64,000 nucleotides of DNA from Botryllus schlosseri (lineage: Eukaryota). Shown one piece after another: positions 33,327 to 42,700 of the stretch (the stretch's first letter is position 1; each line of letters opens with the position of its first letter). The stretch is from positions 19,964,001-20,028,000 of the forward strand of contig CM119379.1 of the NCBI GenBank assembly GCA_051294905.1, written 5' to 3'. Under the pieces are notes generated by a model. That model ran no database searches. It worked only from the letters and a program-made list of their open reading frames with translations, and was not told the DNA's origin. The position numbers were made by a program, and so were the translations under genes.

Positions 33327-33790
33327 TATAATAATAATAATAATAATATAACAATTTATAGAGCGCCGAATATAACAATATATCATTACTACACTAGGGC
33401 GCTGTACATAAAAGGCAATAAAATATAAAAGTAAACGATATGTATAAAAGACGAAGTGCATAGTTGTAGGGCGGAATGAACACTACTCTAGTTCGAACGC
33501 TCGTGTGAATAAAACGGTCTTGATTTTGCGTTTGAAAACATATAGCGAGTCACATAGTCTGATAGAAATTGGAAGATTGTTCCACAGAATGGCGGCCGAG
33601 GAAGAAAAGGTTCTCTCGCCGTAGGTCGATGTTCTGACTCTTGGAACGGACAAGAGCTTTTGCGACTGAGAACGTAGCGCTCTTCCGGGATTATACATTG
33701 ACACTAGCTCACGAAGATACGCTGGTGCACTTCCCTCCATGCATTTGAAGACGTACAGAAGAAGCTTGTATGTATGACATGTGATAGAAG
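33327..33790 (-). mobile_element. 5'-truncated L2-clade LINE
   Basis: YKLLLYVFKCMEGSAPAYLRELV...ALRS...YGERTFS...LWNNLP...FKRKIKT; 3' end ggcgctctataaat followed by (TAT)n. Confidence 0.85.
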
Positions 33791-35924: not shown

Positions 35925-36243
35925 CAGTGGTTCTCAAACTTTTTTAGACACGCCCCCCTTTATGATAATGAAATATTTCGCGCCCCCTTCATCGCGATAT
36001 CGCAACATATTAAAGTCTATAAAGAGAGCTATCAGAATGCTAGCAATCCTAACGGATAGTTTGATGACATCGAAGGTTATGGCTGTTGATGAGAGAATTC
36101 CCAAATACGATGTTCGGACAATAGAAAGACCAATAACCGTGAGCTGGAGATTAATCGCGCCGTGAGCGAAAAAAAATTTCAGTCAACTGCGACTTCACGC
36201 CCCACATCAGAAGCTTTCACGCCCTCCCGTTTGAGAACCACTG
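35925..36243. mobile_element. hAT (Charlie-like) MITE
   Basis: TIRs CAGTGGTTCTCAAAC / GTTTGAGAACCACTG; TSD gtatatac / gtctatac. Confidence 0.85.
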
Positions 36244-36750
36244 GTCTATACTATCACGATTGAACCCCCACATCGGCGAATTGACAGAGTGCAATCTTGA
36301 TTTTCCGGCCGTCTTCCCCTTGGCTTTTTTTGTACCCAAGTAACATGAGTGACTAGCCCTACCGCACTGTCAGACACCAATATCTATTACTTCTTCCCAT
36401 ACCCCTACAAACTGAAGAACCATCCCAGAGTGCTATGGAAGGCATGTGACATGACCCATTGAGTATTTGAAGATACAACCCACCAAGCATAAAGTTTCCA
36501 CTGCCCATTGCAATTTCAGACTCAAAATGATTTTCCAAAACAACATTTTTATCAAATTCAAAAACAATCCGACCAAACAACAATCATGATAATTAAATAT
36601 AGGCAAACATTGATTCAAAACTTTCCATGCTATGGCAGAGTTCAATCACATGACCTCGTCCGGTGACTATAAAATGAAAATAAGTGGTCCACGACTGTAA
36701 ATTTCACAAAAGCATAATTATGTCCGGGGGTCAGCAAATCGGTCGTAATC

Positions 36751-39736
36751 TTAGGTAAATCCACAGCACAAACCAACCAAGCAGGAAGCAACCGGTGATA
36801 TAAAAAGCAGGCATATCAAAAGAGTATAAGAAAAAAATGTAATCATCTCGACGCCAATACGTGACGATGAATAGGACCCGTCGTACGAAATCATCAAAGA
36901 CACAAACACCGAATATGTCAACGTAAAAAGTAAAACACAGAATCTTAATAGTATTGCCCGATATTCTAAGTACGACAGAGATATCTGGCCGTAAGGGTTA
37001 TAAGGCTGCGCCAATCTGTGAGTTATAATGGAAGACGACTTGCTGGTACTCAAAATCATACTTTGTACGTCCTCGGGTATGGTGATCCTGATTTTCTGTT
37101 TCGAAATGGGATCAACGCAATATCTTTGCAAACGCCTGGCCCCACTTTCCTCATCCACATTGCGACGAGAATTACTGTTGGCCGGAAAGTTTTGATAAAT
37201 AACGTTGACTTTTAGGTCGTCTCCGATAGCTTCCAGATTGGAGGACGGTCTTACAACTTTTCCTTCACTTTTCGATGGAGACAGGGAATGGAACACTCGG
37301 TTCTGAAAAAGATGAGGAAGGAATTTTGTAGGAAATCCGACATCATCGATTTTAAAGCGGAAAACACTGTATTCACGAGATATCAGCAAGGAATTAGCCC
37401 TCATTGGTACTATAGTAAAAGTAGAAGTAACGTTGTAAATTTCTACTCAAGTAGAAGTAGGGATTTCCGAGTAAATATAAAGTATTCTAGGCCCAGTTTT
37501 GCTTAAAAAACTGATAAATGTCAGTTGGAAGTAGCATAAAATCGTGATCATTTGGGTGAGTAGCACAAGTATGCAAAATCTACTTGGAGTACTTTCAATG
37601 GTACAAGTATTTCGTTACTGACCACCTTTGGATTTGGACGACAAAAACAGAATCCAAATCCATGCTAATATCAACCGTAGACAGCAATACGCCTATTTTT
37701 CAGCGGGGCTGACGGAATGCGTTGACTCCAAATCATCCCAACACTGAAGCACAGCGCACTGGTGATTACTGTTCTCCTCAAAATTTATTGTGCTCTCTTT
37801 AAATAGAATGGTTATCACAAGATACCTACAAGTCTGGCGACCAAACGCAACCTGTAACAACGCACTGCTACTCTTTCGAAGCGCCCAAGTAGATTTTCAT
37901 ACTTGATCATTGCACAACTTCCTCAAGTTGTGATTTTGAACATCTTCCACTTCTACTCGACAGTTTTCTAGACAAAACTAGGCCTAGAATAATTTTTCTC
38001 TACAAAATTGCTACTTCCACGTCTAGTTTAGTCCCAATCATGTCTAATTGTTCACCTCTGTTGGCTACTAACACCACTAGCTGAGCACCACGAATGTGTC
38101 AACATGACACTGCGATATTATATCCACAACGCATACCTTCTCATCAAATTCTTGCAAGAACAATGAAGATGGTATCCTCGTCACTGTGGTTTCCCTGATT
38201 ACGTGGGTGGGAAATATAGTGCTCTCTCCCAGCTCCCCGCGAAAGTGAATTTCATCGGTCCCAATAGCTTTATCTGATTTATTATCACGATTGGCATCGC
38301 CCGCGGGACCCCCCGGTTCCGGCATATCAGTCTTCCTCTGGTACGGCACCGTGTTTTTGACACAACGACAAACCGAGAGAAAAGCCATCAGCCACAGATG
38401 AAGAGCAACCAGCACGGGGTGAGTCCCTTGCCAGTAGCTGAAAGGATCTTCCATGACGCGTTTCCATTTTCCGGCCCACCGTTCCAAAAGCATTATTCCG
38501 ACCGCAGATATCAGCGTAGTGACGAGGAACATGATTGCTTTCGTCGCCGATATGTAGCTTCCTAATAAATTTCGTACAAGCCCCGTGTCTTCGGATACAA
38601 AATAAATATCGGGATCTTCCATGCCATGATACAGAACGTCGACGTAGAAGCTGTTGGCCACAACAAAGCAGAACACACACATTTTCTCAAACCGAGAGAA
38701 ATTAGAAGTGATAGGCTGAGTGACGTTGCTCTTCGAAAATAAGCACAGCCACGGTATGCGACTCATGAGCATCGCCAGTCTATCGCGATATTTCGAAAGC
38801 CTTTTCATCACGAAAGATTGCCTTCTCGGCTCCAGACACAAAGTTTTAGGCACCGCGTGCTGAAGTAACGCACCGCATGGCTTAAATCTCATCCATCTAT
38901 TTAGGACGGATTTTATGGAAGACGCACTTCTCCAACATAGCCTTTGACCCGTCGATGGATTTTTAACATCCACCTCACTGATGACCATAAGATCTCGAGC
39001 CGAATCCTGTCCAAAGGTAGAGTTACTCTGGCTTTTTTGCGTGGCAACATCATCCGTCCTTTGTGCATCTCCCGAACAATGATCGCAAGCTATCTCTTCA
39101 GCGTTTATGACATCATTGAAGTCTTTTTTCAGTGTGTTGCTAACAGCGACCATTTGAATTTTTGTTATGACGGCAGTGTTCATCGGTAAGTGTAATCCGA
39201 CCGTATCGGTGAAACCAGGCCTTAAAAACAAATGGAGATAATATAGTATACCATTCCCACCTGCAATGATGATGTACCTAAGCAGTCCTTTACAGGAATG
39301 GCGAACCCACACCCAAGGTTCGTCACTGTTATCATTTTCCGTGACGATATGAAACAGAAGGTCGACATCGGATAGCTTTCTTTTCCATGCAGTCTTAATG
39401 TTCACTTGCAAGGAGGACTTTTCACTCTCCTGCTTTTCATCAGAAGAAATGAATACAATGTATCTCTGAACACGCAAGATACATCATCAGTACTTGAAAA
39501 AGACAGTGCCACAATGTTATCATACTTTCCACCTGTCCTTCACGTCTAGAATATAAGCTTGATACAGCAAGCAACCCAAAACAGCATACAATGCGATAAT
39601 AAACCCTGGTATTTCAAACGATATCATATTGCTGCTTTGACTGTATACACACTGAATTGGTGCGCCGTATACGGAAAAGCGGTACACGATAGGCTGTATC
39701 TTGAGTATGGTTTGTGAGATACGCAATCGTATATAC
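36751..39736 (-). CDS. Polycystin-1-like TM1, divergent PLAT and TM2-5 region of the giant gene
   Basis: TM1 IPGFIIALYAVLGCLLYQAYILDVKD. PLAT begins RYIVFISS and includes VISEVDVKNPSTGQ. PWLCLFSKS...NFSRFEKMCVFCFVV...VLYHG corresponds to the PKD1L HLWxSVFxRP...FTRVQR motif. The last exon has two TM helices and then a stop. Confidence 0.78.
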
Positions 39737-42700
39737 CTGAACAGAACACATTTCAATATGACAGACCATTAAAATACAAAGACCGCATAAAAAATTGCCT
39801 CGTTTGAAAAGTCGCAAAGTTGTAGAACACGGGCGGATATTTGATTGATCCATTGTAAACGTGGAATGGTTCAAGCGCAACCCAACCATCACCGTTCAGT
39901 GACATGTCGATGGCAAAAGTCTGAAAAACAAAATCATTTTGCGCACAAGGCTTGCAGAAAAGTTGGTGCAGCGTGAAAGAATTCAGAAAGTAGAATTTCA
40001 TGAGCTGTATGACAATAAATCGATGCATCAAGTGAGGTTTGGCCACATTTTTTGCTTGCATTCTTTGCGTGAACAATCGTAAGGCATGAAGTAGGTTATC
40101 TTTTAACGTATTGCATAGTCACCTAAAATGTACAATGTAATGTTGATGAATTGTTTTGTTAGCAAGTTATTATAATTAAGTCATTATAATGGCAGTGAAT
40201 ATCTCCTGTGAATACTAGAATTCTAAAGCACACTCAAATCTTATAAGTTACTCAGGGCGTAAATGTTTACCCGCTGGAGCTCATAGACACCACGGCTGTA
40301 TTTCTGTAAAATACCAGAGTGAAAAATATCAAATGGGTCAGTCAGTATAGTTAGTTTCATGGGTTGCAGCTATGAGCATATGGCTGTACTGCTGTCAAAT
40401 AACCAGCAATGTGGTTAATTAATGGTGACAATTTTGTAAAGGGTTGCAGTTATATCATCTGATTTCAGCCAAAAGTAGTAGGATAGCATCTTATGAAATA
40501 CGTCAGAGTCGGGGCTGTTGTGCCCTTGTGGCAATTCATGTTTTCATTTTTTATATCTTTGTAATAAATATCGCATAATTTTCAAACAACTTGCTTCAAT
40601 TCCTGCTCTAAAGCCCATATTATAATTCTTCAGTAAAGTGATATTAGATAACACACCTACCTTGCTTCCCTGCTTCAAGGCTGGCAGTATCACTATATGT
40701 AATCGCTGATCAGTGATCATTATCAAAGCAATATCTTGATAAGTGATACCGAGTGTTTGCAATGCAATATTGAACGGAACTGTACCTTCACATCGTTTGC
40801 CAAATTATCAGACGTGTCAAGCCGTAAGCTGGCAACGGCATAATCATTATCGAGGTCCCACTCTACAGTCCACTCATCCTTATCGTTTAAAATCATCTGT
40901 GAAACATAAAAGTAATATAATCCGGGTTACGATGTTGACTTTCACAATTGCCCTACATCGGCCGGTCTCCAGTACGTGTAGGGATCTCCATCAAACATCT
41001 TCCATTCGTCGCAAATCACACCGGTGACCTCGTCAATATACGGCGCGTGCGGGCTTGTTATGTGGTCTCTGACAGCCGGAAGCAACCACTCTCCAGAGCC
41101 CGTCACAGTCAGATGCTGAAGCCAAAGAAAGTAGACCAGTGATTATAAACGGTTGCACTAAATTACCCTTTCAAAGCCAGTATTTACAATTTTTTTTATG
41201 GCACAGCGATCAATGCTACGATTTCGTTACCTGATCCGCAGCGCAATGAGAAGCAAGCATCGTTTGTGAATCAGCCGTGTAGGAATCCGAAATTGACGAC
41301 CTGATCTTCGAAAGAAGTCTCGATGCCACTAACAGTCGTGGCGTCGGCGTTAAGAAATTATTCGTCTCCTGCCGTATCCCAAGTATGAAATCTTCAATGC
41401 TCGAACCGACGGTGGGTTCTGGAATCGCGGAGTATGTAAAACTGCTTGTCAAAACATACAGTGATCTTACCGATACAGCGTACGGTAGCAAGCGATGGAT
41501 GCCAAGTTCCGTTAGATGTGCACGTCCCAATGACGGTCCTAACGCCACTAGTTGATATCCAAGCTCCCGTCAAATCTTGTTTGTCAGCCATGTAATATCC
41601 ATAATTGCATGTGATTTGGATTCGGGCGGTAACGGAATAATTCCCAACACCCGATAAGTCCGTTCGCGACGCGGAACTGATGACGCCCGGATCAGAACAC
41701 TTGATTTCTGCCGACAGAAATCTCAAGTCGATCAATCCCGATTTCACATGCAATATCAGCAATGAGTCGAGAGCAAAAATGAATGCATTATTGACAAGAA
41801 TTTTTTCTTTCGACAGAGTGCAAGTATCATGAAGTACAGTCATCGGTGACAAGGATATTGCCGCACAATGAAAGGATAAACTTTCTAATTACAGGCTAGA
41901 TTTGGGCACAATGACAGCATACGACATTTCGGCACCATGCTGTCTTAACATGAGTAGAGGTGGTCAGTAATGAAGTACTGACATTAATTACTAGAGTGGG
42001 TATGTTTTTTAGACCACTTCCAGTTTTCAAGGCAAAATTGCCTTCTTACACTTTCTCCAAATAGTTTGGGGTATATTTAAAGAGTTTTCAAGGCAAAACT
42101 GTTTACTTCTCACACTTTCGATTAAATGGTTTTGGGGTATAGTCATAACATTTGTGGGAAATAGCTCTGGTAACAGAATTTATTTATAAAATTACACATA
42201 TTTAGAGTATCACTGGTGCGTTAGTCGCTAAGGTGCAATTTCCAATTCGGGAAGTGGTCACCTCCGATTAACTGCTTAAAGTATGCAACCTATCGATCAA
42301 ACTTTTCTTCTACTTTTGCTTGAGTAACAATACTGATTACTTCAACCACTCCTGATCATATGGCTGTCGACTTGAAGCGATTTTTCTATTAACAATCGTC
42401 TTATGCCCCTTTCAAAATATTTCCAAATGACGTTCCCATAGAATAGTAGTTCGCAACAAAAACGTATGCAGTACTTGAACAAACGAAAGTTTGCTCCGGT
42501 TTCCAAGTGGCTTCATGCGAGCATGTCGTCGCGATCGACGTGACTCCGGGCCGGATAAAATAGCCGTAACGGCAAGTGTACTTTGCCACGGTCATGTAGG
42601 AATGCTTTCCGGACCAATATCGAACGGCGTCCTTCAATGCCACCGGATCTGGACAGGCAAGCCCTGAAGATAATAGTACAAAACCTCTCAGCACAAGGCA

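What the first reader, a model, noticed from the sequence alone, without database searches (positions are those of the whole stretch)
36751..41418. Polycystin module lacks both GAIN/GPS and the six-TM channel half
After the last sushi come a 62-aa linker and a discoidin domain, then directly TM1. The ORF stops after TM5 (…VGLCCGFT*), and no TOP/TM6-11 exons are visible in the ~3.6 kb before the next gene. This corresponds to the PC1 N-terminal 5-TM plus PLAT domain alone. It could not form a PC1:PC2 pore in the known way and may signal through PLAT or act as a decoy (inference).
Basis: partly seen in the sequence, partly recalled or inferred. Interest (0 to 1): 0.7.

Follow-up and report, generated by a model that had tools for sequence, protein, structure and literature searches.

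The report
Polycystin-like PLAT anchor without channel
The tail of a giant sushi-repeat surface protein is a five-helix membrane anchor with a PLAT domain, laid out like the first half of polycystin-1. It ends naturally before the ion-channel half, as its Styela clava relatives do, so it is a real and apparently undescribed variant, not a cut-off gene.

Summary
On the minus strand, nine GT-AG exons (41707 to 36751) give an open 954-aa tail. In order it has the last sushi, a 62-aa linker, a discoidin-type domain, TM1, a cytoplasmic beta-sandwich, TM2, TM3, a long disordered loop, TM4 and TM5. The TAA stop follows 4 residues after TM5.

The tail is colinear to its C-terminus with Styela clava LOC120345301 (E 2e-150). 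A paralogue 106 kb away, a second Styela gene and an unidentified ENA contig also end right after TM5.

No GPS, REJ, TOP or channel sequence is in the window, although the same genome has canonical polycystins that the same searches find.

Channel-less polycystin-1 relatives are already known (Ciona s-Themis-A, 5 TM; sea urchin SpREJ7, 6 TM). Those keep REJ and GPS; this family has neither.

Verdict: a new variant of a known kind. Function is untested.

The parts
41471..41707 (-). Last sushi (CCP) exon, phase 1-1.
   Evidence: Pfam Sushi 21.1 bits against a cut-off of 20.7. Splice sites read; model.
41231..41418 (-). Linker exon, about 62 aa, with no recognised domain.
   Evidence: Aligns with the Styela linker.
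39703..41115 (-). Discoidin-type (F5/8 type C-like) domain. It is spread over exons 41115-40957, 40896-40786 and 39920-39784 and the start of exon 39736-39526.
   Evidence: Tail residues 177-288 align with the Styela region that passes Pfam F5_F8_type_C. The window's single exons give no Pfam hit on their own.
39526..39736 (-). Exon holding the end of the discoidin-type domain, a stalk of about 30 aa with no GPS motif, TM1 (39609-39544) and the conserved DVKDRWK motif.
   Evidence: Hydropathy 2.08. Motif conserved in Styela and L009. No GPS hit in the window.
38812..39417 (-). PLAT-fold beta-sandwich in the first cytoplasmic loop. It has an insertion of about 47 aa (39141-39001) and is interrupted by the 57-nt intron.
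39221..39277 (-). In-frame 57-nt GT-AG mini-intron inside the long ORF. Read through, it would add 19 aa.
   Evidence: The homologues lack these residues, and fragment P0009 runs into unrelated sequence at the same point. Sequence. No RNA joint was seen.
38137..39220 (-). Large exon. It holds the second part of PLAT, the NFSRFEK motif plus TM2 (38706-38620), TM3 (38544-38479), the conserved VEDPxSYWQG motif (38457-38425), a hydrophobic helix specific to this species (38421-38353), and the start of the long loop.
   Evidence: TM2-3 against PC1-like TM2-3: hhalign P 0.015, reached by 2 of 200 column shuffles.
36751..37302 (-). Terminal coding exon. It holds the rest of the disordered loop, TM4 (36963-36892), TM5 (36840-36766) and the TAA stop at 36753-36751.
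   Evidence: Colinear with the Styela C-terminus. RNA reads of run X21 run unbroken across the stop.
36388..36750 (-). Probable 3' UTR.
   Evidence: X21 read depth continues from the last exon and fades between 36584 and 36388. No AATAAA-type signal was found.

Best explanation
This is the membrane-anchoring tail of a giant lectin/sushi/discoidin surface receptor. The receptor belongs to a small family that, among named proteins, appears only in the ascidian Styela clava.

The anchor has the topology of the N-terminal membrane half of polycystin-1:
- ectodomain outside;
- TM1;
- a PLAT beta-sandwich in the first cytoplasmic loop;
- a TM2/TM3 hairpin;
- a long disordered cytoplasmic loop;
- a TM4/TM5 hairpin;
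- a cytoplasmic C-terminus.

The protein ends there by design. It has no GAIN/GPS autoproteolysis unit, no REJ, no TOP domain and no S1-S6 channel half. Most likely it derives from a polycystin-1-type gene that kept only the PLAT/5-TM unit and acquired a new ectodomain.

Shown: the gene structure, the conserved end, the PLAT fold, and the absence of GPS and channel sequence.

Inferred: it cannot be a pore subunit. It would act as an adhesion or recognition receptor. Its cytoplasmic PLAT domain and loop would couple ligand binding to membrane lipids or adaptors, for trafficking or signalling, possibly alongside channel-bearing polycystins. Ciona's 5-pass s-Themis-A works in this way beside the 11-pass s-Themis-B.
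For: - Gene model: open, all GT-AG, colinear with Styela to the C-terminus.
- Conserved end: the same end after TM5 is seen in Styela P0012 and P0013, the own-genome paralogue L008 and the ENA contig L009.
- Five TM: five hydrophobic segments are conserved. By my reading of the flanking charges in the sequences, the positive-inside rule fits N-terminus out, C-terminus in.
- Whole-module matches: PKD1L2 E 7.3e-8 (query 17-552), PKDREJ 1.3e-6, PKD1L1 1.4e-5. All start in TM1 and run through PLAT into the later helices. An Atlas cluster of PLAT+GPS fragments gives the best TM-score by the query of the ten rows shown (0.30; 0.40 by the hit).
- Sequence hints: PLAT profile P 7e-5. TM2-3 P 0.015, with the N(F/L)(S/T)R.EK motif aligned to PC1's FTR.(Q/R)R motif.
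- Absences: GPS, REJ, TOP and channel are absent here but are detected in this genome's canonical polycystins.
- Expression: the terminal exon and UTR are transcribed.
- Precedent: a 5-pass channel-less PKD1 homologue exists in ascidians (PMC9265791).
Against: - Pfam PLAT does not reach its threshold on the window or on the Styela proteins.
- The family profile finds no polycystin in PDB sequences.
- The family HMM does not find this genome's own PC1-like exons.
- Whole-module hhalign gives P 0.11, and TM4-5 is not significant, reached by 24 of 200 shuffles.
- The AF2 models are of modest quality (mean pLDDT 56 and 53, from 11 and 15 sequences). TM-scores to polycystins are only about 0.2, so the helical part of the match is weak.
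- The solved PC1 structure did not appear among PDB matches.
- The window protein has a sixth hydrophobic helix that could change its topology.
- RNA support is a handful of reads from one run, with no splice joints.
- Function is entirely inferred.
Confidence: 0.7

Rival explanations
1. Convergent architecture. A PLAT domain was inserted independently into the first loop of an unrelated multi-pass protein. On this view the likeness to polycystin-1 is one of layout, not of descent.
For: Outside the first half of PLAT and a marginal TM2-3 signal, no sequence test links the family to polycystins. The Foldseek hits to PKD1L2 and PKDREJ could be driven by PLAT plus generic helices, since TM-score is about 0.2.
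Against: From general knowledge, PLAT directly after the first TM helix of a multi-pass protein is known only in the PKD1 family. The polycystin matches begin in TM1 and rank above the isolated PLAT domains of lipases. The motif after PLAT and the charged motif after TM1 resemble those of this genome's PKD1 orthologue, by eye and. The TM2/3 and TM4/5 hairpins with a long loop between them follow PC1's spacing.
Confidence: 0.17
2. Artefact or decay. The channel half was lost recently, lies in an assembly gap, or the gene is a pseudogene, so the short end has no meaning.
For: Expression is very low in the four RNA runs sampled, and no splice joints were recovered.
Against: The window has no N. 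The frame is open through nine exons. The same end is found in the paralogue, in two Styela genes with RefSeq models, and in an independent contig. Strongly conserved motifs argue for purifying selection. Reads cross the stop codon into the UTR.
Confidence: 0.03
3. Six-pass topology in this species. The extra hydrophobic helix after the WQG motif spans the membrane, which would put the long loop and the C-terminus outside. The module would then not be a PC1-type five-pass unit.
For: Hydropathy of 2.09 for tail residues 679-697, as high as the accepted TM segments. SpREJ7 is predicted to have six TM (PMC1934368).
Against: The segment is not hydrophobic in either Styela protein. It is followed by basic residues. 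The loop is low-complexity and predicted disordered, as is usual for cytoplasmic loops.
Confidence: 0.1

Closest known systems
Ciona s-Themis-A (sperm self-sterility receptor, a PKD1/PKDREJ homologue)
   Same: An ascidian protein with a large variable ectodomain, an LH2/PLAT domain and a 5-pass membrane region, and no PKD channel domain (PMC9265791).
   Different: s-Themis-A has REJ and GPS domains before TM1. The window protein has sushi repeats, a linker and a discoidin-type domain there, with no REJ or GPS. No sequence comparison with s-Themis-A could be run here.
Sea urchin SpREJ7 (PKD1 family, six predicted TM)
   Same: A PKD1-family member that stops well short of 11 TM, so it lacks the cation-channel half. 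SpREJ3-6 have 11 TM and channel homology; SpREJ7 has six TM (PMC1934368).
   Different: [quoted passage not shown] The window protein ends 4 residues after TM5 and has none of REJ, GPS or coiled coil.
N-terminal membrane half of polycystin-1, PKD1L1-3 and PKDREJ (TM1, PLAT, TM2-TM5)
   Same: The order and sidedness of the elements match. The best whole-module structural matches are these proteins. There are weak motif and profile similarities in PLAT and in TM2-3.
   Different: In those proteins the unit is always preceded by GAIN/GPS and followed by TM6-11 with the TOP domain. Both are absent here. Here PLAT also carries an insertion of about 47 aa and falls below Pfam's threshold.
Large sushi-repeat surface proteins in general
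   Same: A long array of CCP modules with lectin-type domains forms the ectodomain (sushi exons through 42-62 kb).
   Different: Such proteins, as far as I know, are secreted or single-pass. None is known to me with a PLAT-bearing multi-pass anchor. This statement is from general knowledge and was not tested.

Membership tests
PKD1 (polycystin-1/REJ) family | GAIN/GPS autoproteolysis unit directly before TM1 | tested here: not met
   Pfam GPS gives 86 matches in the genome, including the PKD1 orthologue at C11:27085870, but none in the window. Only about 30 residues separate the discoidin-type domain from TM1, and there is no HL(T/S) motif.
PKD1 (polycystin-1/REJ) family | PLAT/LH2 domain in the cytoplasmic loop right after TM1 | tested here: met
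PKD1 (polycystin-1/REJ) family | Eleven TM helices, the last six forming a TRP-like channel fold with a TOP/polycystin domain | tested here: not met
   Stop 4 residues after TM5. No PKD_channel, Polycystin_dom, tblastn or custom-HMM signal in the window. The end is conserved in relatives.
PKD1 (polycystin-1/REJ) family | REJ domain in the ectodomain (absent in PKD1L3) | tested here: not met
   Pfam REJ gives 12 matches in the genome, none in the window. The search works exon by exon, so a very divergent REJ could be missed.
PKD1 (polycystin-1/REJ) family | Detectable sequence homology of TM2-TM5 to family members | tested here: inconclusive
   TM2-3: hhalign P 0.015, reached by 2 of 200 shuffles. 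TM4-5: reached by 24 of 200. Whole module: P 0.11. The PC1 profiles held only 2-3 tunicate sequences.
PKD1 (polycystin-1/REJ) family | C-terminal cytoplasmic coiled coil that binds polycystin-2 | tested here: not met
   Only GFT and the stop follow the last helix.
PLAT/LH2 domain (PF01477) | Eight-stranded beta-sandwich of about 110-120 residues | tested here: met
   42 of the 50 best PDB second-look rows are PLAT domains covered end to end. The Styela model gives the same result.
PLAT/LH2 domain (PF01477) | Score above Pfam's gathering threshold (23 bits) | tested here: not met
   No hit at E up to 1 on the window ORFs, and none at E up to 0.1 on the Styela tails. No hit in the six-frame genome search.
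F5/8 type C (discoidin) domain (PF00754) | Match to the Pfam model | tested here: inconclusive
   The Styela homologues score 34.3 and 28.1 bits against a cut-off of 28.2, so the second is just under it. The window region aligns to them. The window's own exons, tested singly, do not hit.

The most novel reading that the evidence does not exclude
The PLAT/five-helix half of polycystin-1 is a self-sufficient receptor module. Evolution has detached it from both the GAIN/GPS switch and the channel and re-used it under a new sushi/lectin/discoidin ectodomain. In ascidians it would serve as a recognition receptor (self/non-self or gamete/cell adhesion). It would signal through its cytoplasmic PLAT domain and loop, or recruit channel-bearing polycystins in trans. 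That would give a natural system for studying what the poorly understood N-terminal membrane half of polycystin-1 does by itself.
Probability: 0.25. Interest if true: 0.75.

Novelty: new variant of a known kind. Interest (0 to 1): 0.55.

Why it matters
What the first five helices and the PLAT domain of polycystin-1 do is one of the less understood parts of a major human disease protein. Most structural and functional work concerns the GPS cleavage and the channel half.

A conserved natural protein that keeps only this unit, without GPS and without the channel, argues that the unit folds and works independently. It offers a simple system for studying PLAT-dependent trafficking or signalling.

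It also extends the ascidian repertoire of channel-less polycystin-type receptors, one of which (s-Themis-A) takes part in self-sterility. And it gives a first structural annotation to giant 'uncharacterized' Styela proteins of up to 7,864 residues.

Tried and rejected
- Pfam on the single ORFs gave only Sushi, with no PLAT and no discoidin.
- The family profile against PDB sequences gave only a chance hit at E 1.5.
- A profile search of the 5.8-billion-protein set added one new member, P0015.
- A search with the own-genome PC1-like ORF, meant to collect PKD1-family sequences for a deep profile, returned only two close channel-half fragments. No deep PC1 N-terminal profile could therefore be built.
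- ESM Atlas search by language-model features gave no usable hit.
- The family HMM against six-frame translations of this genome's PC1-like, PKD2, TRPML and PLAT loci found nothing.
- Whole-module hhalign gave a colinear alignment, but P was 0.11.
- The locus with a 1299-aa PLAT-bearing open frame proved to be an intronless DENND5-type gene, not a polycystin.
- RNA reads of three of the four runs gave essentially no coverage of the gene. No joints were found, so splicing is supported by homology only.
- The solved PC1 chain never appeared in the PDB fold searches.
- The 'decoy for polycystin-2' idea was considered and set aside. The protein lacks every element known to contact polycystin-2, so there is nothing for a decoy to present.
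Full report
WHAT IS THERE

The window is C9:19964001-20028000 of a 495-Mb animal assembly. It contains no N. The minus strand from about 62 kb down to 36.75 kb carries a long series of sushi exons.

I read the sequence of 36600-41900 and built the tail of the gene. The exons, on the minus strand, are:
- last sushi, 41707-41471;
- linker, 41418-41231;
- three discoidin-type exons, 41115-40957, 40896-40786 and 39920-39784;
- TM1 exon, 39736-39526;
- first PLAT exon, 39465-39278;
- large exon, 39220-38137;
- terminal exon, 37302-36751, with TAA at 36753-36751.

All eight introns are GT-AG: 52, 115, 60, 865, 47, 60, 57 and 834 nt. The frame stays open for 954 residues.

One correction to a plain ORF reading. 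The 466-aa ORF contains an in-frame 57-nt intron (39277-39221). The homologues lack those 19 residues, and one fragment (P0009) runs off into unrelated sequence at exactly that point.

IS THE END REAL?

An exhaustive HMMER search of 1.84 billion representative proteins with the large ORF found only 11 proteins. The only named ones are Styela clava 'uncharacterized' proteins LOC120345301, LOC120345303 and LOC120346535, of up to 7,864 residues.

- The spliced tail aligns with the last 1,100 residues of XP_077971250 from the last sushi to within a few residues of both C-termini (E 2e-150, 30% identity).
- The second Styela gene ends the same way.
- So does an unidentified ENA contig, L009, which also has sushi and discoidin exons upstream.
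- So does a paralogue in this genome at C9:20133886-20134893, about 106 kb beyond the window.
- In RNA run X21, reads cover 36388-37372 without a break across the stop codon and fade out in the following 200-350 nt.
- The other three RNA runs hardly cover the gene, and no splice joint was recovered. Splicing therefore rests on homology.

WHAT IS MISSING

- Pfam PKD_channel, Polycystin_dom (TOP), REJ and GPS all find their targets elsewhere in this genome, and none lies in the window.
- Those targets include a PKD2 gene at C12:18.707-18.709 Mb, whose coding matches lie in a single 902-aa open frame. They also include a PKD1 orthologue at C11:27.07-27.10 Mb with an HLTSFG cleavage site, and a tandem pair of REJ-type 11-TM genes at C11:19.24 and 19.26 Mb. 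describe these loci.
- tblastn with the genome's own PKD2, PC1-like and TRPML proteins gives nothing better than E 0.3 in the window.
- A channel-domain HMM built from them scores at most 1.8 bits between 25000 and 38200. The same HMM detects the distant TRPML control at 4.6e-9.
- Between the end of the discoidin-type domain and TM1 there are only about 30 residues, so a GAIN domain cannot fit.

THE PLAT QUESTION

Pfam's PLAT model does not hit the window or the Styela tails. I therefore predicted structures.
- Window ORF 38137-39465, with the 19 intron-coded residues included: mean pLDDT 56.
- Styela P0012:7185-7864, the whole module: mean pLDDT 53.

Both models give a beta-sandwich that matches complete PLAT domains.

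A profile of the family's PLAT region, compared with a profile of PLAT domains taken from this genome's Pfam hits, gives P 7e-5 and 63% probability over the first 64-68 columns. The domain carries a low-complexity insertion of about 47 aa (39141-39001), which probably explains the Pfam miss.

IS IT A POLYCYSTIN MODULE?

For this reading:
- For the whole Styela module the best AlphaFold DB/Swiss-Prot matches are PKD1L2 (E 7.3e-8, query 17-552), PKDREJ, and PKD1L1. All start in TM1 and run through PLAT into the later helices. They rank ahead of the isolated lipase PLAT domains.
- The window model also picks PKDREJ and PKD1L3 across PLAT plus helices.
- An Atlas cluster of PLAT+GPS fragments has the highest TM-score by the query of the ten rows shown.
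- Hydropathy gives exactly five conserved hydrophobic segments in the Styela proteins.
- By my reading of the flanking charges in the sequences, the topology is N-out, PLAT-in, C-in. That is the accepted topology of PC1's first five helices.
- The TM2-3 region aligns colinearly with that of this genome's PKD1 and REJ-type genes. The N(F/L)(S/T)R.EK motif lies on their FTR.(Q/R)R motif (hhalign P 0.015; reached by 2 of 200 column shuffles).

Against this reading:
- The family profile finds no polycystin among PDB sequences.
- The family HMM does not find the genome's own PC1-like exons.
- The whole-module comparison gives P 0.11.
- TM4-5 is not significant.
- TM-scores to polycystins are only about 0.2.

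My PC1 profiles were shallow (2-3 tunicate sequences), because a search meant to collect more returned only two fragments. I conclude that descent from a PKD1-type gene is likely but not proven.

HOW NEW IS IT?

Channel-less members of the PKD1 family exist.
- Ciona s-Themis-A has a hypervariable region, REJ, GPS, LH2 and a 5-pass membrane domain. s-Themis-B and B2 have 11 passes and a PKD channel domain (PMC9265791).
- Sea urchin SpREJ7 is predicted to have six TM, while SpREJ3-6 have eleven with channel homology (PMC1934368).
- All of these keep REJ and GPS.

I found no paper describing a sushi/discoidin ectodomain on such an anchor. RefSeq calls the Styela proteins uncharacterized. Hence: a new variant of a known kind.

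MECHANISM (INFERRED)

- The protein lacks S1-S6, the TOP domain and any C-terminal tail. It therefore cannot occupy polycystin-1's position in the PC1:PC2 pore, nor bind polycystin-2 through a coiled coil.
- The likeliest role is an adhesion or recognition receptor. Its PLAT domain and long cytoplasmic loop would couple to membrane lipids or adaptors.
- The most conserved cytoplasmic elements are the motif after TM1 (DVKDRWKRY), RPGFTDT inside PLAT, VEDPxSYWQG after TM3, and a (V/I)THR...P..(N/D)P(F/Y) stretch before TM4.
- The last of these resembles endocytic NPF/DPF motifs. That is a guess.

CAVEATS

- The models are of modest confidence.
- The discoidin call for the window is by homology.
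- The window protein's extra hydrophobic helix (38421-38353) might alter its topology.
- Expression evidence is minimal.
- The organisms behind the unnamed family members are unknown.

Noticed in passing
window 36703-36712: Reads of RNA run X21 show a 'goes back 10' joint, with loose ends on both sides, in the 3' UTR. This pattern fits an insertion flanked by a 10-bp duplication in the sequenced animal, or reads from another copy.
   Followed up: no
window 35927-35964: A stretch of about 38 nt has much higher RNA depth than its surroundings (about 10-fold in X17), and the reads run on into unrelated sequence on both sides. It is probably a fragment shared with an abundant transcript or repeat elsewhere.
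   Followed up: no
window 33483-33740 (-): An 85-aa ORF whose sequence recalls, from memory, the conserved C-terminal tail of a retroelement protein. Pfam gives no hit. It lies in the gene-poor 3.6 kb downstream of the stop.
   Followed up: partly
G000:C9:20133886-20134893 (locus L008): A paralogue of the PLAT/5-TM module lies about 106 kb beyond the window's end on the same strand. It also ends just after TM5. It is closer to the divergent fragments P0005 and P0006 than to the window copy.
   Followed up: partly
G000:C11:19243000-19265900 (L005, L006); C11:27075412-27099364 (part in L003); C12:18707790-18709052 (L004): This genome's canonical polycystin set. It comprises a tandem pair of REJ-type 11-TM genes whose channel halves are single exons of 895 and 830 aa, a PKD1 orthologue with an HLTSFG GPS site, and a PKD2 gene whose coding matches lie in one 902-aa open frame. 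More REJ/TOP hits lie at C15:16.08-16.10 Mb and C16:5.97-6.00 Mb.
   Followed up: partly
G000:C14:10773914-10777744 (L001:1915-5745): A single 1276-aa ORF with the DENND5/Rab6IP1 domain set (uDENN, DENN, dDENN, RUN, PLAT).
   Followed up: no
window 39737-39783, 41419-41470, 39221-39277: Very short GT-AG introns of 47, 52 and 57 nt. Two of them are easy to read through as coding sequence, which matters for any ORF-based annotation of this genome.
   Followed up: yes
locus L009 (ENA ERZ21736675 contig ctg14312l): An unidentified eukaryotic contig encodes the same sushi - discoidin - TM1 - PLAT - 5-TM layout. Its PLAT N-terminus looks more canonical and its last loop is much longer, in a 565-aa open frame.
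   Followed up: partly
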